The notes: a model not told the origin generated them from the sequence alone. Shown: positions 4,362-55,236, counted from the stretch's first letter. The stretch: DNA of 64,000 nucleotides from IMGVR_UViG_3300031669_000001:186001-250000; one strand, 5' to 3'. Translations and numbers: made by a program.

Positions 4362-7163
4362 TTACTCCTCGTCAAAATTCAGTAGCTTGTTAACAACTAC
4401 CGTGTGTTCAGTTGGGACTTCCCAACCAATCGGTTCAAAGATGTTGCTGATCTTCTTGTCGATCAACTTTAACTCTGTGAGTCGAACATCAATCTCAAAA
4501 TTGTCAGTGAACCACTTTGGCAGTTCTTCTGTGTCAGAGTCGAACGCCATGCTTTTGAAGTCGTGTTCATTCTTCTTGAGCCACACGATCTTAATCTTTG
4601 ATCCAGAGATTATCTGACGAGTGTTCTGATCACCAAACATCTCAATGCATAAGTTATGGTTGATTGCTGGACGGACGTTGCCTGGAAGCTTTGCGTTTCC
4701 AAATCCAGGCTTCTCGATGCGCAACCACTTCTCATAGTAGTCTTCAAGGTTCTTGACAGAGGTTGTTGTCGCATAATCCAACGGCTTGACGTCATCCTTG
4801 TTGAAGTTTCTGCGGAATTCTATGATCTCATCATTGATCTTCTTCTTCGGTTTTTCTGTCAAGACATCCAACAGAACCTTCTTCAGCATTGTACGAATAG
4901 CTTCTGGAGTTGAGGAGATCTTGATGTCACTACCTTGAGACTTGAGCGCCTTCTTGTCATCGACGTCAATCTTAACTCCTTCAATGTCCTTCGCCAACAG
5001 GATGTACTTCTTCTTGGCGCTGAAGATACCTGCCGAAGCTACAATTTCACGGTTTGCCTTGATGAGAGTATCAAAACCTGGCTGACAGAAGAAGGCTTCA
5101 CGAACGAATGGTGCAAAGGATTCATTGACAGCCGCAGCGATCGCGTCAGCGCATTGAATTGCATCCTCGACGTTATCTTTGACTAGCTGTTCCATCACGA
5201 AGTAACAGCTATCAGTATCAGAGTAGATAGGACCGATGCCATGTGGAACATCCAACGTGTAAGCATTTTCAAATTCTCGCTTGCTGTTTTTAGTTTGCTT
5301 TGCCTTCGTTACTGTCTTGACAAGCTTAGGAGCACCTTCACCCATCAGATTGACCGCTACGGTATTGATCATGTGCGTGGTGATTTGACGACCAGAACCT
5401 GTTGTCGATGCACCAAGTCTTGGATCGTGGAACCTACAGAATTCATTCAAGGTTGCACCGTAAGTAGAGTTCAACAGAACTTTACGAACACCTTGCAACA
5501 TGTCGTAATACTCTGAAAGATCGCTGAGCCTTATGTACTCAGGATCTGTCTTGTCACCACAGACTTCCAGCCTTTCTGCAGCCATCTTGGCGTGCTTCTT
5601 CTTGAGGCCTTGCAGTTCCTTACGACCGTTGAACCAGTAGGTCAAGACCGCTGGGATAAGTCCTTCACCATTACCTTGATCAAGGATGGTGCCGTAAGCT
5701 GTAAGAGCGTACTTGTTATCCTTCAGGAAGTTGATCATATTTCCAGCGGTGATCTGAAGACCTGCATCTACAGGTTCTCCATCCTCGTCTAGAGGGTTGG
5801 TTCCTTCTGGAATGATCGTCACAGTTGCGTTCTGGGCTTCTTCATCCTCAGGGTGGAGGTTTGCGTAGTAGACTCTCTTCCAACCTTCCTCATACTCTTC
5901 AAGCTGTCCAACGATCTTTTCAGGTGACAGGTTTAACGTCCGGTACGTACTGGGGTACAGGGATGCCAAGTCAATAGATCCTATCATCTTGTGCAAGCCG
6001 ATCTTCGGTGTCATCACCAGAGCACCCTCTACGTACGATGAAGGCTTATGTGTCTTATCAAAGACAATTTCATTGCGGATTGAATGACTAAAGTTTATGA
6101 TAGCTGTATCGATCAGCTGCACCGAACCAAAGATGGCGGAGAAGTTTACCGTCGCCTCATGGACCATGGTGTTGGCAAGCTGAATGTACTTGAACTTCTT
6201 GTCGAGATCCAAGATACAGGTAACGTCGTGTCTATTGTACTTTAGGAAGTGGATGAAGTCATTGCGGTAGAGCTCGTAGAGGGTGCCTTCATAGTGCAGC
6301 TTAGGGACGTCTAACTCTTCTTCAGTGATAGCTGCTAGAGAGAATGATTGACGACCACCGAGGGTGAATTTCTTGAAGAGACCCATGTAATCGAGGTGGA
6401 CTCTGCTGAGAAGATCGATGACGATTTCCTTTTCCTTCGAACCCTTGAAGCGAAACTTTTCACCCCATCTAGGAGTAGGACCACCTTCAAAAGCTAGGTG
6501 GCGAAGTGCATGCTTACCAAATAAAAGTTCGATCCTCTTCGCGATGTACGGCATATCAAAGAATTCAGAGTTCCAACCTGACAGAATATCAATGTCTTGA
6601 ATGAGATCAATGAACGTTTGTAGAAGCTCTCGCTCACTGTTAAACAACCAATAGTTGTCATCGTGCATATCTTGAGGAAGAAGCGCACTTATTGGAATTC
6701 CAGCTTCCTTAGCGTTATTGATCCAGGTTTCTGGAGGAAGAGCTAAAGTGAAGTATGCTTTGACGGCGGTGTTGTAGACCGTGATCGCATTGATAGGCGC
6801 ATAGGGATTTGAGGCTCTAGGCCAACCAATTGCTGGATCGTAATCAACTTCTATATCCAAGAATCCGACTGAAACTACTGGGATCTTCTTCCCAAAGTAG
6901 CTCATCATAACCTTCTCTTGAGGGTGAAGATCGCTCTCGAATCGCTTTGGATGAGAACGACAGCCTGCGTCAAACTCACTTCTAGAGCTGAACTCCAGAA
7001 GCTTTAGCTTTTCACCTGTGATCGCCTTGAATGTTCCTTCTTCATCAGGAACGTAGAAATTGTATGGACTGTCGTATTCGCGCAGGTTGCGCTTGCCTGA
7101 TTCGGTCTTTTCCCAAACGAGAACCTTATCACGCCCACGTTCGTGGTATGAGGATATAAACAA
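4362..7163 (-). CDS. family B DNA polymerase (gp43-like), TTG start
   Basis: Exo motifs DIEVD, GWN..FD, YN..D; polymerase motifs DLASLYPS, K..LNS.YG, YSDTDS, KKKY. Confidence 0.97.
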   Translation of the reverse strand: MFISSYHERGRDKVLVWEKTESGKRNLREYDSPYNFYVPDEEGTFKAITGEKLKLLEFSSRSEFDAGCRSHPKRFESDLHPQEKVMMSYFGKKIPVVSVGFLDIEVDYDPAIGWPRASNPYAPINAITVYNTAVKAYFTLALPPETWINNAKEAGIPISALLPQDMHDDNYWLFNSERELLQTFIDLIQDIDILSGWNSEFFDMPYIAKRIELLFGKHALRHLAFEGGPTPRWGEKFRFKGSKEKEIVIDLLSRVHLDYMGLFKKFTLGGRQSFSLAAITEEELDVPKLHYEGTLYELYRNDFIHFLKYNRHDVTCILDLDKKFKYIQLANTMVHEATVNFSAIFGSVQLIDTAIINFSHSIRNEIVFDKTHKPSSYVEGALVMTPKIGLHKMIGSIDLASLYPSTYRTLNLSPEKIVGQLEEYEEGWKRVYYANLHPEDEEAQNATVTIIPEGTNPLDEDGEPVDAGLQITAGNMINFLKDNKYALTAYGTILDQGNGEGLIPAVLTYWFNGRKELQGLKKKHAKMAAERLEVCGDKTDPEYIRLSDLSEYYDMLQGVRKVLLNSTYGATLNEFCRFHDPRLGASTTGSGRQITTHMINTVAVNLMGEGAPKLVKTVTKAKQTKNSKREFENAYTLDVPHGIGPIYSDTDSCYFVMEQLVKDNVEDAIQCADAIAAAVNESFAPFVREAFFCQPGFDTLIKANREIVASAGIFSAKKKYILLAKDIEGVKIDVDDKKALKSQGSDIKISSTPEAIRTMLKKVLLDVLTEKPKKKINDEIIEFRRNFNKDDVKPLDYATTTSVKNLEDYYEKWLRIEKPGFGNAKLPGNVRPAINHNLCIEMFGDQNTRQIISGSKIKIVWLKKNEHDFKSMAFDSDTEELPKWFTDNFEIDVRLTELKLIDKKISNIFEPIGWEVPTEHTVVVNKLLNFDEE

Positions 7164-8138: not shown

Positions 8139-8632
8139 CAGTGATAAGACGATGTGAACGAATTGTGTGGAACGTTGATTGGAGAAAACACAAAGTCACC
8201 GTTGCCTGATAACTCGATGGCATCTTCTGTGAACATCACTTCATACTTGAACATCCATGAATTAGGGCTAAGCTCTGTTTCGTCATCGCCATCTGGATTG
8301 TCTGCAAAGAATATCACGCTGCAGCAATTTTCATCCCAGTCGCTCAAGAAATTTCCACCGTACTTGTTCGCCAACTCCTGCATAAGGTCATTGCTTTGAC
8401 CTAGTATCGCTGGATTTGCTACTGAGAACTGACTTACCTGATGTTCTTCTTTATCAGGGAAAATGGCTTCAAGCTTCTTGTCAAAGTCATCTATCGCGCC
8501 ATTCTTAGCTTCAGAATACGAGAGATACAGCTTCGAGCGAAGCTTAAAGTCTATCATCAAGCCTGTCATGGCTGTAACCTTCTGACGATCTAACATAGAC
8601 TTTACACGTGGATTTGTCAGGTTAAATGACAC
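8138..8632 (-). CDS. hypothetical protein
   Basis: 164 aa ORF. Confidence 0.65.
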   Translation of the reverse strand: MSFNLTNPRVKSMLDRQKVTAMTGLMIDFKLRSKLYLSYSEAKNGAIDDFDKKLEAIFPDKEEHQVSQFSVANPAILGQSNDLMQELANKYGGNFLSDWDENCCSVIFFADNPDGDDETELSPNSWMFKYEVMFTEDAIELSGNGDFVFSPINVPHNSFTSSYH

Positions 8633-8664
8633 TACGTAGTAAAAGTTTCTAATTTTAATTCTCC

Positions 8665-10095
8665 TTAAGTTGGACCGATGATGTAAGAATGCTTAAGACC
8701 TGCAGGTGCAGTGGTGGCACCTGCGGTCGATTGAGTCGCTAAAAGAGTTGCAGGTATTTTTTCGCTTGGAATTAAAGGTTGTAAAAGTTGCGTTAGCGTT
8801 GATTGTAAAGTTGTGAATTTATAAATTCCCGTTAATTGATCTTGACTAAACGTAAATGAGAAGCTGGTCGATGTAAATTCAGATCCACTCAAGAAAGCAT
8901 TTAGCTCTTTGTCCTTAAAGTCATAAGGATCTTTCGCTAACAATAAATTGGCTTCACTCAACTTGACGGGGAGTGGGGCTGTAGTGGTTACTTGGCCATT
9001 ACCTGATACGCCAGGACTGGTATTGATTGCTACAAAAACTGTTCCTATCGTAAATCCTATTGGAGCTCCATATAATTCCCAAGGAGTAGTTCCTAACGTT
9101 GAGATGGTGTATGTAGTGCCATCTACCATGCTTGTAGCCGCAATTGGTGAACCTGTTATGACTGTGATAGAATCTATTCCGTAACTTATGTCCTTTAGGA
9201 GGGTTGATAAATTCGTACAGTGCATCAAATAACGGATGCCGACCCCTGGAATGTTAGCCGCGTAATAATCACCCCAAGCACATTCATTTAAGAATGCTAC
9301 GTCAGATATAAATGGGAATGATACTCCATTAACAGATGGATTCAGCGTGTCAAATTCAAGAGCTATGATGCTACTTTGAGATACGTTTGCAGCCAAATCA
9401 TTGTATACGATAATTTCTATGACATTATTTTGCTCATAGATCGTTGGAGTAAATGTGATGCTTTGGTCCGGTATCGAAACGATGTAAGCTGACGGACTTA
9501 ATTCTATTCCATTTGAATAAACGCTGATGTTGTTTGTTGCATCGAATCTCAATGTGTTGGCATCAGGGCTGTTATCTGCACCGCTTATAACGTTGACTTC
9601 ACCAGTTTTGAGGTAAGTGTATAACGTAGATTGCAAAACGCTCGGTGAGATTGGGAAGATGTTCAACAAGATCTTTACGTTCTGTGGAAGAGCAACAGCA
9701 TCTACCTGAGTGTCCACTATTATTTGTGAACCTGTGGGATCTAATATAGAAAATTGATGACTTCCAATAGATGGAGTATCTGCAGTTCTCTTCAAGATCG
9801 CCATCGACAGCATACCAGCTCCGCCGCTAGTGTTGAGAGATACGCTTGGATCAGTTGGAAGAACAAGCGCAGGGTTGATCACCGTTCCACGTTGAATGTA
9901 ATCTTGAAGACCAGAAACCGGTGGAGTGAATAAGAATTTTTTTCCTGAGCTCTCACCAATTCTTGATAACTTACCTCTACACTTGTAAGTTATGATGCAG
10001 CGAATAGGATCTACCCGCTGACCACTGATCTGTAGCTCAGTCTGACGCTTGCAGGTATCGCATTGAAAGATGATGTATTTGTTGAGTGTGCTCAT
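8665..10095 (-). CDS. putative virion structural protein
   Basis: 476 aa, T/S/I/P rich, beta-rich, N-terminal CxxC, late-promoter-like GTAAATA upstream. Confidence 0.55.
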   Translation of the reverse strand: MSTLNKYIIFQCDTCKRQTELQISGQRVDPIRCIITYKCRGKLSRIGESSGKKFLFTPPVSGLQDYIQRGTVINPALVLPTDPSVSLNTSGGAGMLSMAILKRTADTPSIGSHQFSILDPTGSQIIVDTQVDAVALPQNVKILLNIFPISPSVLQSTLYTYLKTGEVNVISGADNSPDANTLRFDATNNISVYSNGIELSPSAYIVSIPDQSITFTPTIYEQNNVIEIIVYNDLAANVSQSSIIALEFDTLNPSVNGVSFPFISDVAFLNECAWGDYYAANIPGVGIRYLMHCTNLSTLLKDISYGIDSITVITGSPIAATSMVDGTTYTISTLGTTPWELYGAPIGFTIGTVFVAINTSPGVSGNGQVTTTAPLPVKLSEANLLLAKDPYDFKDKELNAFLSGSEFTSTSFSFTFSQDQLTGIYKFTTLQSTLTQLLQPLIPSEKIPATLLATQSTAGATTAPAGLKHSYIIGPT

Positions 10096-16916: not shown

Positions 16917-16992
16917 TGGTCGCCCTGGAGGGATTCGAACCCTCGATCGCGATTTTAGAGATCGCAGCTTTACCGCTAAGCATTACAAGGCG
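16917..16992 (-). tRNA. amber suppressor tRNA (anticodon CTA)
   Basis: Acceptor CGCCTTG/CAGGGCG-A-CCA, anticodon arm GCGAT-CTCTAAA-ATCGC, T arm GAGGG-TTCGAAT-CCCTC. Confidence 0.88.
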
Positions 16993-37364: not shown

Positions 37365-37472
37365 TACCCAAAGTAGGATTTGAACCTACATCTCCCCTTT
37401 TCTGTCTTCACGTGGTTTCCCATGCTCGCAAAGCTCTTACATAGAGTGCTCTACCATTGAAGCTATTCAGGT
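37365..37472 (-). ncRNA. tRNA-like RNA with an about 40-nt expanded anticodon region
   Basis: Acceptor ACCTGAA/TTTGGGT, canonical D arm and T arm, no CCA. Confidence 0.6.
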
Positions 37473-37545
37473 GGTGCTCCCACGAGGAATCGAACCTCGG
37501 ACTCTTGATTACGAAACAAGCATAAGACCACTTTACTATAGGAGC
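37472..37545 (-). tRNA. tRNA-Thr(CGT)
   Basis: Loop TTCGTAA, CCA. Confidence 0.85.
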
Positions 37546-38277: not shown

Positions 38278-38772
38278 CTATTTCTTTCTTGATACCTTCT
38301 TAACTCCACCGTCTGTGAAGATCAACTTGTGACCTTTTGCAAGGTTACAAGGTTGACACATAGTCTGCATATTGTCAACAGAGTTTGCTCCACCGTGATA
38401 CTTAGGCAGACGATGATCTGCATTCATCAAGATTTCCTTGCCATCTTCGTTGATGGCGTAGAGATTCATGATGACAGGTTTTCCAGGCTCAGCATCGTTA
38501 ATTTCAACAGCGAAGAATGAGCCTTCAATTCCACAACAACGACACTTTGTACCGTGAATCAAGAAAGTTCTCAGCTTGACGTTGTGAACGTTGATCAAGG
38601 TGTTGAACGCTTCCATCTCAACAGAAGGTGAGCTGCTATGAGGGAGTGAATCAATTTCTTTCATCGCGTCCAAGACACCGTCAACAGACAGGATTCCTAA
38701 CCGACGAAAGTTACGATGCTTCGCGACTAAAAAGTCGTCCATGAAAGAAGAGATTTTTGATATGTTCAACAT
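38278..38772 (-). CDS. HNH endonuclease family protein
   Basis: CxCC, DH..P...GG.N...N.Q..C..CN..K; start uncertain. Confidence 0.8.
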   Translation of the reverse strand: MLNISKISSFMDDFLVAKHRNFRRLGILSVDGVLDAMKEIDSLPHSSSPSVEMEAFNTLINVHNVKLRTFLIHGTKCRCCGIEGSFFAVEINDAEPGKPVIMNLYAINEDGKEILMNADHRLPKYHGGANSVDNMQTMCQPCNLAKGHKLIFTDGGVKKVSRKK

Positions 38773-38881
38773 TTGAGTAATTATATCACTGTTCATGTTG
38801 AAAGTAAACACAATTTGGTAGTACTCCACGGTTACGATCCGTGCCGTTGCAGCCCATCTGACCACTCTCCAGAGGATATGT

Positions 38882-41704: not shown

Positions 41705-41716
41705 ACAACGATTGAA

Positions 41717-41787
41717 CGACATACGGGGAATCGAACCCGCGATCTCCGGCGTGAAGGCCAGGGTTTTGTCCGTTAAACTACACATCT
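41717..41787 (-). tRNA. Glu-like tRNA with a 6-nt anticodon loop (CTTCAC), no CCA
   Basis: D and T arms intact; stem CTGGC/GCCGG. Confidence 0.5.
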
Positions 41788-41870
41788 CAGATCTTTTTTC
41801 AAAACTTGCTGGAATCGATTAAAATCTGTCAATCGTGATCATATCCACGGCAGCAACCGCTTCAATAATT

Positions 41871-42199: not shown

Positions 42200-42267
42200 A
42201 TGTGCAACTCTCATCTAAGGTTGAATCATCCTGTCACCAGACCTGACCAATCCGAAAAGTTGTTGCA

Positions 42268-42342
42268 TGGTACACCCAACCGGATTCGAACCGGTATTTC
42301 CTGATTGAGGGTCAAGCGACCTAGCCGTTAGTCGATGAGTGT
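42268..42342 (-). tRNA. tRNA-Glu(CTC), C33
   Basis: Loop CCCTCAA, CCA. Confidence 0.8.
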
Positions 42343-42361
42343 AAAGTGTTTCTCATTATAG

Positions 42362-42420
42362 TCAATTCCTTTTGTTTGAATCGATAAAAGCATTATAACA
42401 CGATCTACAGAAAAGTACAC
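42362..42420 (-). repeat. about 60-bp early promoter/SD cassette, near-identical at 48379-48438 and partial at 46881-46919
   Basis: Shared GTTTGAATCGATAAAAGCATTATAACA.GATCTACAGAAAAGTACAC. Confidence 0.85.
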
Positions 42421-42540
42421 AACTATTTAAGTGAAAACGAAATTATTTTTGATAAACTCTGCAGTCGAATCTTCATTCGTGTACAACTTGAACTCGTTAG
42501 CGCCCATGTTGAAGTTCAATGTATCACCTAGTGTACATTT

Positions 42541-42618
42541 TGGTCAGGATGGTCGGATTCGAACCGACGGTCTCTCACTTCCGAGGCGAGTGGATTAGCC
42601 AGACTTTCCCACACCCTG
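42541..42618 (-). tRNA. tRNA-Pro(CGG)
   Basis: Loop CTCGGAA, CCA. Confidence 0.85.
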
Positions 42619-42620
42619 AT

Positions 42621-42742
42621 TGGTGGACATCACGAGAATCGAACTCGCTATCTTCAGGCGAAGCATATACCAAAGTTTACACTCATCCAGAGACCCCCAT
42701 TTGGTGGAGATTACGGGAATCGAACCCGCATACCTGATGCCC
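42621..42742 (-). ncRNA. two tandem tRNA-Ala-like pieces with swapped acceptor strands
   Basis: Two T arms and two ACCA ends; GGGCATC pairs 7/7 with the distal GATGTCC. Confidence 0.6.
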
Positions 42743-42744
42743 AT

Positions 42745-42819
42745 TGGTGGAGGCCGAGGGAGTTGAACCCTTCTAGACAAGATACTTGCAAGGCATCTCC
42801 GCAGCCCGCTGCTGCCCCC
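42745..42819 (-). tRNA. tRNA-Ala(TGC), atypical D arm
   Basis: G3:U70, loop CTTGCAA, CCA. Confidence 0.75.
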
Positions 42820-42829
42820 ATGAAACAAG

Positions 42830-42902
42830 TCCGATGTCCTAAGCCACTATGACGACCTCCAGCATTACCCGCTAGGCCGGGATTCGAACCCGGGTTTTCG
42901 GA
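42830..42902 (-). ncRNA. circularly permuted tRNA mimic
   Basis: TCCGA-T arm-closed acceptor-D arm-TCGGA. Confidence 0.7.
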
Positions 42903-42978
42903 AGGTGGAGGATGGGAGGTTCGAACTCCCGACCTATAGCTTGCAAAGCTACCGCTCTCCCAGCTGAGCTAATCCCCC
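42903..42978 (-). tRNA. tRNA-Ala(TGC)
   Basis: G3:U70, loop TTTGCAA. Confidence 0.9.
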
Positions 42979-42983
42979 ATCGT

Positions 42984-43051
42984 GACGGTGCTTTCCCACT
43001 AAGCTACTACCGATTTCTCAGTAGACAGGATTTGAACCATGTGTCTCCGCC
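42984..43051 (-). ncRNA. circularly permuted tRNA mimic
   Basis: GGCGG-T arm-CTACTGA GAAA TCGGTAG-TA-D arm-CCGTC. Confidence 0.75.
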
Positions 43052-43125
43052 GGTGCCCCCACACGGAATCGAACCGCGGTATCCTGATTACAAAACAGGT
43101 GTAATGACCATTATACGACAGGGGC
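43051..43125 (-). tRNA. tRNA-Thr(TGT)
   Basis: Loop TTTGTAA. Confidence 0.85.
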
Positions 43126-43131
43126 TTTATT

Positions 43132-43207
43132 TGGTACAGACGATTGGGATCGAACCAATATCCTCGGGGTTTCAAGCCGATACATGAACCATCATTGTTA
43201 CGTCTGC
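43132..43207 (-). tRNA. tRNA-Phe(GAA)
   Basis: Loop TTGAAAC, CCA. Confidence 0.75.
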
Positions 43208-43210
43208 ATT

Positions 43211-43319
43211 AAGTAGAGTAAAAGTTGTTTAGAGCTATTGCCACCTTGGCACCCCTGCTCTTGAAGAGCAGGGGATTAGAATCGAACTAACGAAGTATCT
43301 CTTAACATTGCAACTACTT
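43211..43319 (-). ncRNA. Y-RNA-like handle family, copy 2 (T-acceptor-D module)
   Basis: AAGTA-GTTGCA...GATACTTCG, T loop TTCGATT, 10-bp closed stem, TTTTACTC-TACTT. Confidence 0.75.
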
Positions 43320-43392
43320 GGTGGTGAGTGAAGGTATCGATCCTTCGTCTAAGCCTTATGAGAGCCTTGTTCTACCTTTGAACTAAATCACC
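43319..43392 (-). tRNA. tRNA-Met(CAT)
   Basis: Loop CTCATAA, CCA. Confidence 0.8.
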
Positions 43393-43416
43393 ACGATAGC
43401 TTTACCTATCGGAATA

Positions 43417-43681: not shown

Positions 43682-43756
43682 TGGTCCGCCCACGTGGAAT
43701 CGAACCACGGACCGGAGTTTAGAAGACTCCTGTTATATCCACTTAACTATGGGCAG
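43682..43756 (-). tRNA. tRNA-Arg(TCT)
   Basis: Loop CTTCTAA, CCA; 5' end overlaps the endonuclease stop codon. Confidence 0.88.
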
Positions 43757-44379
43757 AAACATTTTCTTCCTTTTGACCACCCTTGATCTAGGTAAGTCTG
43801 AAGAATATCTTTCTTGATCTTGATGGTTTTCTGTTGCTTTTCTGAGAAGATCCAGCAAGATCCAAATTGAGAGTTTCTATCACCGGATTGAGCAGATCTC
43901 ATTTTAGCTTTCGTATCTTCAGAGTGAGTCTTTCCGAACATCGGATTAGAGTCTGCTGAATTCAAATCGCTTAATTTTGCTCTTGATTCATATGAATGAG
44001 ATTTCCCTTGGAATTTTCCCTTGCCCATATTTGATTTTCTTGCAGCATTACTTGCATTGGACTCTATGCAGAACCCATTTCTTCTAATCTTTGTGATGTA
44101 TTCAAATCCACCGGTGCCGCCTCTTCTGAGGTTGTAGACATCATCACGAGAAAGAAACTCATCACTAACAATTTCTTTCTCCCTCGCATACATAGCTTCC
44201 GAATTCTCGAAAGTCTCAAGTATGACTTTTTCAAAGTTTTCGATCCCGTATCTTTTGATAGCACGACCGATAACTTTTCCAGAGCCCATGTACCCATCAT
44301 CAAAATTCTTGGTCTTATGAACTCCAACGTAGATTTTTCCATTCACCATGTTGGTGATTTGATAGATGCAATATTTCAT
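43747..44379 (-). CDS. GIY-YIG homing endonuclease (Seg-like) with NUMOD3 repeats
   Basis: CIY.ITN..NGKIYVG, YMGSG, YNL..GG.GG, GK.HS repeats. Confidence 0.9.
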   Translation of the reverse strand: MKYCIYQITNMVNGKIYVGVHKTKNFDDGYMGSGKVIGRAIKRYGIENFEKVILETFENSEAMYAREKEIVSDEFLSRDDVYNLRRGGTGGFEYITKIRRNGFCIESNASNAARKSNMGKGKFQGKSHSYESRAKLSDLNSADSNPMFGKTHSEDTKAKMRSAQSGDRNSQFGSCWIFSEKQQKTIKIKKDILQTYLDQGWSKGRKCFCP

Positions 44380-45209: not shown

Positions 45210-45284
45210 AGGCTCCCCAGGCTGGATTCGAACCAACGACCAAGTGATTAACAGTCACCTACTCTACCACTGAGCTACTAGGGA
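45210..45284 (-). tRNA. tRNA-Asn(GTT)
   Basis: Loop CTGTTAA; overlaps the endonuclease stop codon. Confidence 0.88.
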
Positions 45285-45880
45285 ATTGTTACAAAATCTT
45301 TTGCTATTTGAATCCACTGTTTTGGATCTTTGTACATCTTTTGCCATTCTATTCTAAGTACTTTCCATCCAAAATCTTTCAAAAATTTATCTTTTCGTTC
45401 ATCACGTTCTCGATATTCTTGAAATCGTTTGTGTTGTTCACCGTCGATCTCAATGCAGAGACTTTTATGAACCCAGGCAAAGTCAAGAGAGAAGTTGCCT
45501 AAGGAATATTCGCGAACATAATTTTTATCTTCAAACTCGTTTTCGATAACTTTCATGAAAAACTTTTCTGGATAACTTGGCATGTTGTTCCACCGAGATT
45601 TACCAATATTCCAAGCTCGTCCTTCAGAATGAGCTTTCTTCATTGATTCGCTTGTTAGCTGTTTAGTTTTGGAAGAAGGAATATGACCAGGTTTTCCCTT
45701 AAGTGCGATAGAAATTTTATTGGACATCTTCCAGATTCTTGGATCAGATTTATTCAAACCTTTAGTCCAAGAATCTTTACCAGCAAAGGGTTTATGATCT
45801 TTACCAGAACCGTGTGTTCTCCAAATATGAGTTCCAATACCCATTTTAGAAAATTCTTTATCGCAAAATGTACATTTCAT
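45278..45880 (-). CDS. putative homing endonuclease (zinc finger + DUF559/Vsr-like domain)
   Basis: CxxC..H....H, S.PE, DFAW, IEIDG.QH, RD..KD, GW.VLR; start set to MKCTFC. Confidence 0.8.
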   Translation of the reverse strand: MKCTFCDKEFSKMGIGTHIWRTHGSGKDHKPFAGKDSWTKGLNKSDPRIWKMSNKISIALKGKPGHIPSSKTKQLTSESMKKAHSEGRAWNIGKSRWNNMPSYPEKFFMKVIENEFEDKNYVREYSLGNFSLDFAWVHKSLCIEIDGEQHKRFQEYRERDERKDKFLKDFGWKVLRIEWQKMYKDPKQWIQIAKDFVTIP

Positions 45881-45917
45881 GTTGAATTGTAACACAGTTG
45901 AGAAAATAAGAACATTA

Positions 45918-46011
45918 TGGCTCCCCCAGCAGGATTCGAACCTGCATACCGTTCGCGACGGACTACGAGTGGTTAACAGCCACTTCACTTGCCAGTTATG
46001 TGTACGGGGGA
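45918..46011 (-). tRNA. tRNA-Asn(GTT) with long variable arm
   Basis: Loop CTGTTAA, variable hairpin CCGT/ACGG, CCA. Confidence 0.8.
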
Positions 46012-46016
46012 ATGTT

Positions 46017-46091
46017 TGGCGGTGTTCAGAGGAGTTGAACCTCAATCAAAAGGCCTCGGTGGCCTCCGTGCTAACGTTACACTAAAACACC
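46017..46091 (-). tRNA. tRNA-Arg(CCG), A33
   Basis: Loop CACCGAG, CCA. Confidence 0.65.
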
Positions 46092-46942: not shown

Positions 46943-47092
46943 AAGTACTCTGCAGGATAATCTCTCCGCTCTACCATTTGAGCTACCCAGCAGCGTTTGG
47001 CTACCGAGGCTGGATTCGAACCAACATCTGACTATGATCAATGATCCCATGCACGGAGGTCATTGACTGCAAAATTATCCTGCAAAGTACTT
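46943..47092 (-). ncRNA. permuted tRNA mimic closed by a 19-bp terminal stem
   Basis: T arm GTTGG-TTCGAAT-CCAGC, stem CTCGGTAGC/GCTGCTGGG, TA, D arm GCTC-AAATGGTA-GAGC. Confidence 0.7.
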
Positions 47093-53910: not shown

Positions 53911-53970
53911 AATGAATTTCCTTATGAGTATGTTATGAAAAGAGGAATCAAATGATTCCTCGTTTGCTAC

Positions 53971-54174
53971 TTAAACAGCTTGGATATTGGAAGCTTGTGC
54001 TCCCTTTTGTCCTTGAGTCACGTCAAAGGAAACCTTCTGGCCTTCTTTGAGAGATTTGAAACCGCTCATGTTGATCGCAGAGAAGTGTGCGAACAAATCG
54101 TCACTACCTACATCTGGGGTAATGAAGCCAAAACCTTTAGCGTCATTGAACCACTTTACTGTACCTGTTGCCAT
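53971..54174 (-). CDS. cspA: cold-shock protein
   Basis: [21 protein letters not shown]. Confidence 0.96.
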
Positions 54175-54227
54175 TCTTATTTCTTTCTAAATTGAACAAT
54201 CACCGAAATTGATGATTGGGTAAAACA

Positions 54228-54568
54228 ATAAACTAGAGATGAGGGCAGATTATGCTCTTACCAAGCCTTTCGGCCGTCTTCCCTTTCGGGGTCGACATGG
54301 TAGCTTGAATTAACCATCCTCAAGCTTAGGACCACCTAACCGCACATGATCGGACATGCGCAACCAGCATGTTAAGCACCTAGTTTAGTCCAGGCTACGA
54401 CCCAGTTTATCGTCTGGGAACTATTCTGTGATCACCACAGACAGTGGGTAAACTATTTTCACACTCTTGCTTGGTTAGGTCGAGTGCTATCTTAAAGTTG
54501 CCCTTAAGAAGTAGTTCCATCAGCTTCACAAGTTGTCGAAGTATCACAATCTAATGCAGCTAGTTTAT
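54228..54568 (-). ncRNA. Y-RNA-like handle family, copy 4 (about 280-nt structured payload)
   Basis: ATAAACTA-GCTGCATTAGATTGT-GATACTTCG...ATAATCT-GCCCTCATCTC-TAGTTTAT. Confidence 0.7.
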
Positions 54569-54640: not shown

Positions 54641-54641
54641 A

Positions 54642-54766
54642 CATTGATGAGAAAAAGTTGATAGAGGCTTTTTGTGGCGGCTGTCCTACCACTGGACGAC
54701 TAGTCAGGAATCGAACCTGAGTTCGCTGCTTTGGGCGAAGTAACTCTTATCTACGCAACATCAATG
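54642..54766 (-). ncRNA. Y-RNA-like handle family, copy 5 (T arm then D arm)
   Basis: CATTGAT-GTTGCGTAG...GTTACTTCG, TCAGG-TTCGATT-CCTGA, GTCC-AGTGGTA-GGAC, TTTTTCTC-ATCAATG. Confidence 0.78.
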
Positions 54767-54916
54767 GTGCCATACAATCAGAGTCAACCAACTGCATGAC
54801 ATTTCAGCATTTTACCGGAGCTACCCGGCTTTCCTTCGAGGATCTTTAATACCGCCCTTTCGGGTGATGGTACAAGAATTGCTGAACCCCTAGTGGAAGT
54901 GCCCTTCCACACCGTT

Positions 54917-55105: not shown

Positions 55106-55236
55106 TGAATCGAGAAAGAGGCGAAAAGAGAGATTTTAGGGTTTTGCCATTAAACTATACCCACTAGGGGCAGCCGGAATCGAACCGACGTCACTCGTTT
55201 AAGAGACGAAGTAACTCTTTTCTGTGCAACGATTCA
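55106..55236 (-). ncRNA. Y-RNA-like handle family, copy 6 (T-acceptor-D module)
   Basis: GTCGG-TTCGATT-CCGGC, TGCCC/GGGTA, TA, GTTT-AATGGCA-AAAC inside the handle. Confidence 0.8.

What the first reader, a model, noticed from the sequence alone, without database searches (positions are those of the whole stretch)
42621..42742. Strand-swapped double-headed tRNA-Ala mimic
Seen: piece A (42702-42742, 41 nt) is GGGCATC-AGGTAT-T arm-AATCTCC-ACCA. Piece B (42621-42698, 78 nt) is GGGGGTC-43 nt-T arm-GATGTCC-ACCA. Each self-pairs with an internal mismatch. A5' pairs with B3' 7/7 and B5' pairs with A3' 6/7, both giving G3:U70 and A73. Neither piece has a clear anticodon arm. Established: G3:U70 is the AlaRS determinant, also used by tmRNA, including two-piece permuted tmRNAs. 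Inference: a heterodimer with two alanylatable ends, acting as a decoy or tmRNA-like rescue RNA.
Basis: partly seen in the sequence, partly recalled or inferred. Interest (0 to 1): 0.72.

Follow-up and report, generated by a model that had tools for sequence, protein, structure and literature searches.

The report
Chimeric alanine-tRNA-like pair in phage array
Two small alanine-tRNA-like units sit side by side in a giant phage's tRNA gene array, and their end strands fit each other better than themselves; they occur in this phage lineage only, so they look more like a young recombination product than a proven new two-piece RNA.

Summary
On the minus strand, 42742-42702 (A, 41 nt) and 42698-42621 (B, 78 nt) are two CCA-ended units, each with an intact T arm and no anticodon arm. 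A's 5' strand pairs 7/7 with B's 3' strand, and B's 5' strand pairs 6/7 with A's 3' strand.

They lie in a polycistronic array of over 40 tRNA genes in a 345-kb phage. The phage also encodes a permuted tmRNA, a Ro60 homologue and several Y-RNA-like tRNA mimics.

Folding models strongly prefer the A5':B3' helix: probability about 1, and 12.8 kcal/mol better than self-pairing. No other adjacent unit pair in the array behaves this way.

The case for a swap still rests on a single pair position, 4:69. B's 5' strand pairs about as well with several alanine-type 3' strands.

Neither unit scores as a tRNA, tmRNA or YrlA. The closest relatives keep the neighbouring odd RNAs, with compensatory changes, but lack A and B at a rearranged site next to a homing endonuclease. 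No homologue was found anywhere, so covariation cannot be tested.

Best reading: a young, recombination-built chimera of alanine-type tRNA genes that folds as one nested 122-nt tRNA-like RNA. A processed double-headed dimer remains possible but unproven.

The parts
42702..42742 (-). Piece A: a 41-nt acceptor/T-arm minihelix-like unit. It has the layout of a tRNA-Ala lacking nt 8-43.
   Evidence: Sequence read. No tRNA call. Weak hit to the tmRNA model with its middle deleted, 14.4 bits. The 3' 23 nt are identical to the end of a genuine tRNA-Ala(UGC) in L002.
42736..42742 (-). A 5' acceptor strand, GGGCAUC.
   Evidence: Pairs 7/7 with 42625-42631 and only 5/7 with A's own 3' strand. Pairing probability with B3' is about 1.0.
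42730..42735 (-). Linker AGGUAU, resembling the AGGU(C/A) variable loop of alanine tRNAs.
   Evidence: Compared with the window's tRNA-Ala at 42904-42978 and the L110 tRNA-Ala. It can also pair with AUCU of A3' in the predicted minimum-energy fold.
42713..42729 (-). T arm of A: 5-bp stem including G49.U65, loop UUCGAUU.
42702..42712 (-). A 3' acceptor strand AAUCUCC plus ACCA.
   Evidence: This is the alanine-type strand whose natural partner in L002 is GGGGAUU.
42699..42701 (-). 3-nt spacer AAU with U at -1, like other unit boundaries in the array.
   Evidence: The boundaries at 42743-42744 and 42619-42620 also read AU.
42621..42698 (-). Piece B: a 78-nt tRNA-sized unit without a D arm or anticodon arm.
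   Evidence: Apart from weak, far sub-threshold tmRNA-model hits on its T arm and 3' end, no Rfam tRNA, tmRNA or YrlA model matches B as a whole at E<=10. Its interior has no significant similarity to any alanine tRNA or to the phage tmRNA.
42692..42698 (-). B 5' acceptor strand GGGGGUC, followed by UCUGGAU. The GG comes soon after the acceptor strand, as in tmRNA rather than tRNA.
42632..42648 (-). T arm of B: GCGAG-UUCGAUU-CUCGU.
   Evidence: It differs from A's T stem by one compensated pair (G:C to A:U).
42621..42631 (-). B 3' acceptor strand GAUGUCC plus ACCA.

Best explanation
A and B are a lineage-specific chimera of alanine-type tRNA genes. They were built by duplication, internal deletion and exchange in a recombination-prone tRNA array that carries homing endonucleases, in a 345-kb phage.

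The outer frame is A's 5' strand, B's T arm, B's 3' strand and ACCA. It forms one perfect alanine-type acceptor/T-arm domain with G3:U70, C4:G69 and A73. Nested inside it is what looks like the junction of two tandem alanine-type genes: variable loop, T arm, AAUCUCC-ACCA, AAU, GGGGGUC.

The stretch has no promoter or terminator of its own and is most likely made as part of the array's long precursor (inferred). In that precursor the 122 nt are predicted to fold through the A5':B3' helix. RNase P would then release one nested tRNA-like RNA with a single exposed alanine-type CCA end.

A second cut at the internal AAU|G junction could split it into 41- and 78-nt pieces that stay paired. Such a cut occurs in two-piece tmRNA and in Mycobacterium smegmatis YrlA. 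Nothing shows that this happens here or that it is selected for.

I regard the element as young and probably dispensable: at most an accidental alanine-acceptor mimic, not a conserved device.

Shown: the sequence, pair counts, fold energies, absence from relatives, and absence of homologues. Inferred: the origin by recombination, the processing, and the lack of a dedicated function.
For: Anatomy:
- A has exactly the layout of a tRNA-Ala without nt 8-43.
- A's 3' 23 nt equal the end of a real tRNA-Ala in L002.
- The 3' 28 nt of A and B differ at 4 positions, two of them a compensated T-stem pair (direct reading). This suggests they are paralogues.

Only pair 4:69 distinguishes swap from cis. 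One conversion tract or exchange between a GGGG/CUCC-type and a GGGC/GUCC-type alanine gene would produce that pattern.

Both stem types occur in this phage clade. In distant relatives the conserved odd tRNA-Ala is followed by a GGGC...GUCC tRNA-Ala, directly in L110 and a few units downstream in L113, and one also occurs elsewhere in L114. Here it is followed directly by A. An Ala-5'/Asp-3' chimeric pseudo-tRNA in L108 shows that such exchanges do occur.

The locus is rearranged relative to the closest relatives G001 and L016. These carry a GIY-YIG endonuclease gene here and go from element S straight to tRNA-Pro(CGG), without A and B. Homing endonuclease genes also flank the site in this phage.

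The neighbouring odd RNAs are conserved with compensatory changes. A and B have no homologue anywhere searched.

Folding: the outer helix has probability about 1 and the cis folds about 0. No promoter or terminator lies next to the element.

A 629-nt contig identical to 42458-43086 occurs in a metatranscriptome library.
Against: - Both T arms, both ACCA ends, G3:U70, A73 and the U(-1) boundaries are intact. That is more order than random decay predicts, although a recent origin would explain it.
- The 4:69 change is compensated in trans on both stems, which is what selection for cross-pairing would give.
- The compensated T-stem difference between A and B hints at selection on both arms.
- Only one other lineage is available, so absence there cannot separate gain from loss.
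- B's 43-nt interior has no identifiable source. A simple origin from duplicated tRNA genes is therefore incomplete.
Confidence: 0.45

Rival explanations
1. The precursor is cut by RNase P at both G+1 sites and trimmed to CCA. The 41- and 78-nt pieces stay together through two swapped acceptor helices, each stacked on a T arm. This gives a double-headed RNA with two alanylatable ends that acts as an AlaRS, EF-Tu or SmpB decoy, or as a tmRNA-like factor.
For: - The double-headed nested fold is only 1.1 kcal/mol above the minimum, and cis/cis is 12.8 kcal/mol worse.
- The co-fold favours the dimer by about 11 kcal/mol.
- Swapping restores two natural alanine stem types, C4:G69 and G4:C69.
- The junction matches the tmRNA_permuted model over positions 36-101.
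- Precedents exist. Two-piece tmRNA is one. M. smegmatis YrlA is cut by RNase P in its acceptor-like loop and receives CCA (PMC4201824). [quoted passage not shown]
- The phage itself uses a permuted tmRNA.
Against: - The inner helix has probability only 0.1-0.46 and competes with an extended T hairpin of A.
- B5' fits several alanine-type 3' strands as well or better.
- There is no tag frame, and the tmRNA_permuted score is 21.7 against a gathering score of 47.
- The element is absent from the nearest relatives and has no homologue.
- The ACCA-AAU-G junction is simply what any two adjacent CCA-encoding tRNA genes look like. Chen et al. warn that dimeric tRNAs give false positives.
- The phage encodes no SmpB.
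Confidence: 0.2
2. Two independent units, each folding on its own: an alanine minihelix (A) and an anticodon-less tRNA-like RNA (B). Each would be processed like a tRNA and serve separately as a substrate or decoy for enzymes that recognise the acceptor/T-arm domain.
For: - Each unit has its own T arm, ACCA end and U(-1) boundary, with the spacing typical of the array.
- From my own knowledge, not tested here: minihelices carrying G3:U70 are AlaRS substrates (Francklyn and Schimmel 1989).
Against: - The cis acceptor stems are defective. A is 5/7 with a C.C mismatch next to G3:U70, and B has a G.G mismatch at 4:69.
- A alone prefers a different hairpin: -12.0 against -8.4 kcal/mol for the minihelix.
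- Cis pairs have probability about 0 in the joint transcript.
Confidence: 0.1
3. A divergent member of the phage's Y-RNA-like (YrlA-type) permuted tRNA mimics. A's T arm, the A3':B5' stem and B's GG-containing stretch would form the tRNA-like module. The terminal helix would take the place of the Ro-binding stem.
For: - The genome encodes a TROVE/Ro60 protein.
- The array holds several permuted cloverleafs and Y-RNA-like units.
- The order T arm, acceptor-like stem, D-side region is the YrlA order (PMC4201824).
Against: - No YrlA hit on A or B even at E<=10.
- There is no D arm.
- The loop is ACCAAAU rather than the GNRA-type tetraloops of the phage's real modules.
- It lacks the shared AAGAGNUACUUCG motif.
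- The terminal helix is an alanine acceptor stem next to a second T arm and CCA, not a Ro-binding helix.
Confidence: 0.08
4. A decayed partial duplicate of the phage's own permuted tmRNA gene: the acceptor piece plus the start of the coding piece.
For: - Sub-threshold hits to the tmRNA_permuted and beta_tmRNA models.
- B begins GGGGGU..CUGG, like the coding piece of the real tmRNA.
- A resembles the acceptor piece of the permuted tmRNA of Acinetobacter phage BUCT628 at 83% over 42 nt.
Against: - BLAST against the own genome finds only T-loop matches to the real tmRNA at 306555-306937.
- B's interior scores below shuffles against the tmRNA 5' region, z = -1.3.
- The conserved GGAC before the T arm and the UUCGA after the GG are missing (direct reading).
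- The BUCT628 match, E = 0.008, is carried by the T arm and the CUCCACCA end.
Confidence: 0.05

Closest known systems
Two-piece (circularly permuted) tmRNA, Rfam RF04321. The same phage has one at genome position 306555-306937.
   Same: The gene order is T arm, alanine-type 3' strand with CCA, short linker, GGGG 5' strand followed closely by CUGG. An outer helix closes the whole. The alanine identity set is present: G3:U70 and A73.
   Different: - The score is 21.7 bits against a gathering score of 47, and only model positions 36-101 are covered.
- The linker is 3 nt.
- There is no tag reading frame and there are no pseudoknots.
- The second piece ends in its own T arm, acceptor strand and CCA.
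YrlA-type bacterial and phage Y RNAs, RF02553, especially M. smegmatis YrlA (PMC4201824).
   Same: It is a permuted tRNA-like module with the acceptor-like stem between the T side and the D side. In M. smegmatis that stem is cut by RNase P and receives CCA, giving two paired pieces. The phage encodes Ro60 and several such modules.
   Different: There is no YrlA score, no D arm and no Ro-binding helix or motif. CCA is encoded rather than added. A second complete acceptor/T-arm head is present.
Alanine minihelix and microhelix substrates of AlaRS (own knowledge: Francklyn and Schimmel 1989).
   Same: Piece A is a 7-nt strand, a short linker, a T arm, a 7-nt strand and ACCA, with G3:U70 and A73.
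   Different: Those substrates are laboratory constructs with perfect stems. A's own stem has C4.C69 and C7.A66 mismatches and becomes perfect only with B's strand.
Chimeric or truncated pseudo-tRNAs in phage tRNA arrays, and tandem-duplicate intermediates of gene permutation (PMC3978253).
   Same: It is lineage-specific and sits next to homing endonuclease genes at a rearranged locus. Its strands come from two alanine stem types. An Ala/Asp chimera in L108 is a direct parallel. The duplication-then-loss model for permuted tmRNA and tRNA genes predicts such intermediates.
   Different: Both T arms, both CCA ends and a perfect cross-helix are retained. B's interior has no identifiable parent.

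Membership tests
tRNA (Rfam RF00005 / ARAGORN) | Cloverleaf with D arm and anticodon arm, scoring at or above 29 bits. | tested here: not met
   Neither piece is called by ARAGORN or by RF00005, while 38-42 neighbours are. There is no tRNA hit at E<=10 when B is scanned alone.
tRNA (Rfam RF00005 / ARAGORN) | A 7-bp acceptor stem formed in cis. | tested here: not met
   A is 5/7 and B is 6/7 in cis. 38 of the genome's 52 tRNAs are 7/7. The probability of cis pairs is about 0.
tRNA (Rfam RF00005 / ARAGORN) | T arm with a UUCGAUU-type loop and an encoded NCCA end. | tested here: met
   Both pieces have these. Most tRNAs of this phage also encode CCA.
Permuted two-piece tmRNA (RF04321) | Covariance-model score at or above the gathering score of 47 over the whole model. 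| tested here: not met
   21.7 and 18.0 bits, covering model positions 36-101 of 213 only. The real phage tmRNA in G001 scores 104 bits.
Permuted two-piece tmRNA (RF04321) | Resume codon and a tag reading frame ending in a stop codon. | tested here: not met
   ARAGORN's tmRNA search of the whole genome calls only 306555-306937. B is 78 nt and has no such frame (direct reading).
Permuted two-piece tmRNA (RF04321) | Processing into two pieces that stay paired, and SmpB binding. | not testable with these tools
   Only contigs of one RNA library are available and they give no ends. The complex prediction was not run by the tool.
AlaRS substrates (tRNA-Ala identity) | G3:U70 in a regular acceptor helix, A73 and a CCA end. 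| tested here: met
   These are met at sequence level for the A5':B3' helix (7/7) and, with a terminal C.A mismatch, for B5':A3'. In cis the pair next to G3:U70 is mismatched in both units.
AlaRS substrates (tRNA-Ala identity) | Actual aminoacylation with alanine. | not testable with these tools
The phage encodes no AlaRS.
YrlA Y RNA (RF02553) | Covariance-model score at or above 69, a D arm, and a Ro-binding helix formed by the ends. | tested here: not met
   There is no YrlA hit on 42621-42742 at E<=10 or E<=1. Other units of the array give 24-30 bits.
Conserved structured RNA (any family) | Homologues with compensatory changes. | tested here: not met
   The element is absent at the syntenic site of G001 and L016. 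No homologue was found with exact patterns, BLAST or covariance model R1. The searches were limited, so this is absence of evidence.

The most novel reading that the evidence does not exclude
The phage makes a natural two-piece, double-headed alanine-acceptor RNA. A nested precursor is cut by RNase P at two sites, and the 41- and 78-nt pieces stay together by domain-swapped acceptor helices. Each helix is stacked on its own T arm and ends in CCA. This would be a tRNA-sized analogue of two-piece tmRNA. It would also be a living example of the tandem-duplicate intermediate proposed for RNA gene permutation. Its use would be to engage host AlaRS, EF-Tu or SmpB during infection.
Probability: 0.15. 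Interest if true: 0.8.

Novelty: new variant of a known kind. Interest (0 to 1): 0.35.

Why it matters
If the cross-paired RNA is real and processed, it would be the first natural minihelix-type alanine acceptor. It would also be a domain-swapped tRNA mimic and a direct snapshot of how permuted RNA genes such as two-piece tmRNA arise from tandem duplicates.

If it is only a young chimera, it still shows how homing-endonuclease-rich phage tRNA arrays shuffle acceptor strands. Such shuffling creates RNAs that could be charged and that lack an anticodon.

The wider context may matter more than the element itself. This phage clade carries a dense set of tRNA mimics: a conserved odd tRNA-Ala, permuted cloverleafs, Y-RNA-like units with a Ro60 gene, and a permuted tmRNA. 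This set deserves study.

Tried and rejected
- **Exact-pattern scans of viral contigs.** A's 3' half found only an ordinary tRNA-Ala in an unrelated contig. B's 5' part found nothing.
- **Protein anchors.** Neighbouring ORFs gave no relatives and are not conserved in G001. The DNA polymerase gave one relative contig, G001.
- **Anchoring on the conserved neighbour S.** The viral and metagenome collections returned only G001, a near-identical second contig (L016) and the source contig itself.
- **A generic pattern for a minihelix unit after a CCA.** It returned 85 loci. All were tmRNA 3' ends or chance matches, with none at 7/7. A general minihelix scan of the genome and related loci found only chance matches inside normal tRNAs.
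- **Covariance model R1 of the nested structure over 15 viral records.** Hits were adjacent tRNAs or the real permuted tmRNA.
- **BLAST of the element against 50,697 phage records.** This gave T-arm matches only. The best, a permuted tmRNA acceptor piece in Acinetobacter phage BUCT628, is carried by the T arm and the CCA end.
- **A parent for B's interior.** None was found among the tRNAs of this phage and G001, alanine tRNAs of other loci, or the tmRNA.
- **Protein-coding reading.** Rejected. Only short frames run through the tRNA-like sequence.
- **Complex prediction with E. coli AlaRS.** The tool did not run it, so there is no evidence either way.
- **RNA evidence.** It is limited to contigs of one metatranscriptome. 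DNA carry-over is not excluded and no ends were seen.

Full report
**Context**

The window is bases 186001-250000 of a 345,069-bp virus record with direct terminal repeats. It is the same contig as a soil metagenome record. Its family-B DNA polymerase is 43% identical to that of Ralstonia jumbo phage RsoM2USA and 34% to that of Xanthomonas phage XacN1.

The element lies on the minus strand inside an array of about 40 tRNA genes (35.2-46.2 kb, plus 54.5-55.5 kb). The array is interspersed with GIY-YIG, HNH and DUF559 endonuclease genes. Most tRNAs there encode CCA and have 7/7 acceptor stems.

Elsewhere the genome carries:
- a permuted tmRNA with tag ANDANGALALAA at 306555-306937;
- a TROVE/Ro60 reading frame.

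It encodes no SmpB and no AlaRS.

**Observation**

- Piece A (42742-42702) is a 7-nt strand GGGCAUC, the linker AGGUAU, a canonical T arm, AAUCUCC and ACCA.
- After the spacer AAU comes piece B (42698-42621): GGGGGUC, 43 nt, a canonical T arm, GAUGUCC and ACCA.
- The boundaries on both sides read AU before the first G, as at other unit boundaries.

A5':B3' pairs 7/7 and B5':A3' pairs 6/7. In cis, A pairs 5/7 and B pairs 6/7. Neither piece has an anticodon arm, and neither is called a tRNA.

**Is it more than chance?**

Among this genome's real tRNAs, 18 of 2352 ordered pairs cross-pair 7/7. Ten of 1176 unordered pairs reach 7 and at least 6.

In a partition-function control over 18 tightly packed neighbour pairs of the array, ordinary pairs keep their own stems. 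Their cis probability is 0.8-0.99 and their cross probability is 0. Only A-B has the upstream 5' strand fully paired to the downstream 3' end, at probability 1.0.

On the 122-mer:
- the free minimum is -41.7 kcal/mol, z = -2.2 against shuffles;
- the fully double-headed nested fold is -40.6;
- the cis/cis fold is -28.9;
- outer pairs have probability about 1, inner pairs 0.1-0.46 and cis pairs about 0.

As separate molecules, A+B co-fold at -43.4, against -12.0 and -20.0 for the monomers.

The limits are clear. All alanine-type strands share GGG/UCC. B5' pairs 6-7 of 7 with four other alanine-type 3' strands. A66 mismatches C7 whichever partner is used. Only pair 4:69 discriminates: C.C and G.G in cis, C-G and G-C in trans.

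**Family tests**

The only Rfam signal is a sub-threshold match of 42685-42729 to the permuted-tmRNA and beta-tmRNA models. The scores are 21.7 and 19.3 bits, against gathering scores of 47 and 84. The match covers just the T arm, CUCCACCA, the linker and GGGGGU..CUGGAU.

Any alanine-type gene followed closely by another GGGG-starting unit would look like this. Chen et al. make the same point about dimeric tRNAs as false positives for YrlA (PMC4201824).

B scanned alone matches nothing beyond its T arm and 3' end. ARAGORN finds no tag frame here.

**Comparative evidence**

The closest relative available is G001, with a polymerase 71% identical. A second contig of the same type is L016. Both have a syntenic array.

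The gene order there is tRNA-Ala(UGC), a GIY-YIG endonuclease gene, the odd tRNA-Ala, element S, tRNA-Pro(CGG). Here the order is tRNA-Ala(UGC), S, the odd tRNA-Ala, A, B, tRNA-Pro(CGG). So A and B are missing there, and the locus is rearranged next to a mobile endonuclease gene.

The neighbours are conserved:
- S is 89% identical, with compensatory changes in its closed stem.
- The odd tRNA-Ala at 42745-42819 recurs in 13 further large-phage contigs whose polymerases are only 36-41% identical to ours. Across six distinct copies, seven of its pairs show compensatory changes.

Nothing resembling A+B was found by exact patterns, BLAST or a covariance model of the nested structure run over 15 viral records. 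The only statement possible is that the element is not conserved in the one sister lineage available.

**Anatomy and origin**

- A has the layout of a tRNA-Ala with nt 8-43 removed. It keeps the acceptor strand, an AGGU-type variable loop, the T arm, the 3' strand and CCA.
- A's last 23 nt are identical to the end of a genuine tRNA-Ala(UGC) in an unrelated viral contig, whose 5' strand is GGGGAUU.
- The last 28 nt of A and B differ at four positions, two of which form a compensated T-stem pair. The 3' halves are therefore probably paralogues.
- B's interior has no detectable parent.

In distant members of the clade, the odd tRNA-Ala is followed by a normal tRNA-Ala with a GGGC...GUCC stem, directly in L110 and a few units downstream in L113, and one also occurs elsewhere in L114. 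This is the stem type that A5' and B3' form together.

L108 holds an Ala-5'/Asp-3' chimeric pseudo-tRNA. Exchanges inside tRNA genes therefore do occur in these arrays.

A single conversion tract or exchange between a GGGG/CUCC-type and a GGGC/GUCC-type alanine gene would yield exactly the observed pattern of trans-compensated 4:69 without any selection for cross-pairing. The accepted model for permuted tmRNA and tRNA genes is tandem duplication followed by loss of outer parts. It predicts intermediates of this shape (PMC3978253).

**Expression**

No promoter- or terminator-like site lies next to the element. One metatranscriptome library holds a 629-nt contig identical to 42458-43086, which spans both pieces. 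The DNA library of the source sample covers the region evenly. This fits a polycistronic precursor. DNA carry-over is not excluded, and no RNA ends are visible.

**Most likely mechanism**

I commit to a young chimera of alanine-type genes. It is transcribed with the array and folds through the A5':B3' helix into one nested tRNA-like RNA with a single exposed alanine-type CCA end. It probably has no conserved role (confidence 0.45).

It is physically reasonable and has precedents in two-piece tmRNA and in M. smegmatis YrlA, which is cut by RNase P in its acceptor-like loop and receives CCA. However, it rests on one discriminating base pair and a marginal inner helix.

Weaker rivals are:
- independent cis-folded units (0.1);
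- a YrlA-type module (0.08);
- a decayed tmRNA duplicate (0.05).

**Novelty and verdict**

This is a new variant of a known kind: tRNA-derived chimeras or mimics in phage tRNA arrays. Interest is moderate to low for the element itself, because there is no conservation and no sign of function. It would be high if the two-piece form were shown.

The surrounding repertoire of tRNA mimics is the stronger lead. It includes the conserved odd tRNA-Ala, the permuted cloverleafs, Y-RNA-like units together with a phage Ro60, and the permuted tmRNA.

Noticed in passing
window 42745-42819 (-); also L103 5585-5659, L104 8512-8586, L110 10559-10633, L113 5995-6069, L015 6182-6256: A noncanonical tRNA-Ala(UGC) whose D arm is reduced to a 4-bp stem with a tetraloop. 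It carries G3:U70. It is nearly invariant in 13 further large-phage contigs whose polymerases are only 36-41% identical to this phage's. Seven of its pairs show compensatory changes. ARAGORN misses it in most of those loci.
   Followed up: partly
window 42820-42903 (-) and 42979-43051 (-); orthologues at L012 8198-8282 and 9158-9222: Circularly permuted cloverleafs: outer stem, T arm, closed 7-bp acceptor-like hairpin, D arm. Their ends sit where the anticodon stem would be, and they are wedged between tRNA genes. They are conserved in the relative with compensatory changes. One orthologue gives a sub-threshold YrlA hit of 30 bits.
   Followed up: partly
window 43208-43318, 54641-54800, 55130-55236 (-); Rfam YrlA sub-threshold hits at 46966-47031, 55140-55194, 37419-37523; genome 332372-332893 (-): Several Y-RNA-like units in the array share the motif AAGAGNUACUUCG ahead of a T arm. 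The phage also encodes a TROVE/Ro60 homologue. This suggests a phage Ro60/Y-RNA system with multiple RNAs.
   Followed up: partly
genome 306555-306937 (-), outside the window; L012 12432-12790 (-): A phage-encoded permuted two-piece tmRNA with tag ANDANGALALAA. The relative has the same tag and its tmRNA sits just upstream of its tRNA array. The phage has no SmpB gene.
   Followed up: partly
L108 6142-6220 and 6765-6848; L113 6122-6200: tRNA-sized units with G3:U70 acceptor stems and a conserved unusual 7-nt loop (GUAACUC or GAAACUC) on a covarying stem, next to the odd tRNA-Ala in distant relatives. They may be alanine-identity tRNAs with a non-alanine anticodon, or mimics.
   Followed up: no
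L108 just after 6848; L110 13945-14037; L113 about 6085-6115: Three further oddities in distant relatives: an Ala-5'/Asp-3' chimeric pseudo-tRNA, a 93-nt unit with two T loops and a tmRNA-like 5' end, and a 31-nt GGGCC...GGUCC-ACCA hairpin.
   Followed up: no
window 43747-44379, 38278-38865, 45278-46045 (-); L012 about 8380-9045 (-): GIY-YIG/NUMOD3, HNH and DUF559 endonuclease genes are scattered through the array. The relative has a different GIY-YIG gene inserted exactly at the locus where the two phages differ.
   Followed up: partly
window 16917-16992 (-) and 41716-41789 (-): A tRNA with anticodon CUA, a possible amber suppressor that ARAGORN labels Pyl. Also a tRNA-like gene for which ARAGORN reports a two-base anticodon; it scores 28.8 bits in Rfam, just under threshold.
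   Followed up: no
window 53935-54318 (-): A sub-threshold match to the cspA thermoregulator RNA: 55 bits against a gathering score of 78.
   Followed up: no
window 42200-43400: A small soil metatranscriptome library holds contigs identical to most of this stretch at uneven depth, with a hole at 43143-43265. The DNA library of the source sample is flat. This hints at real transcription of the array.
   Followed up: partly
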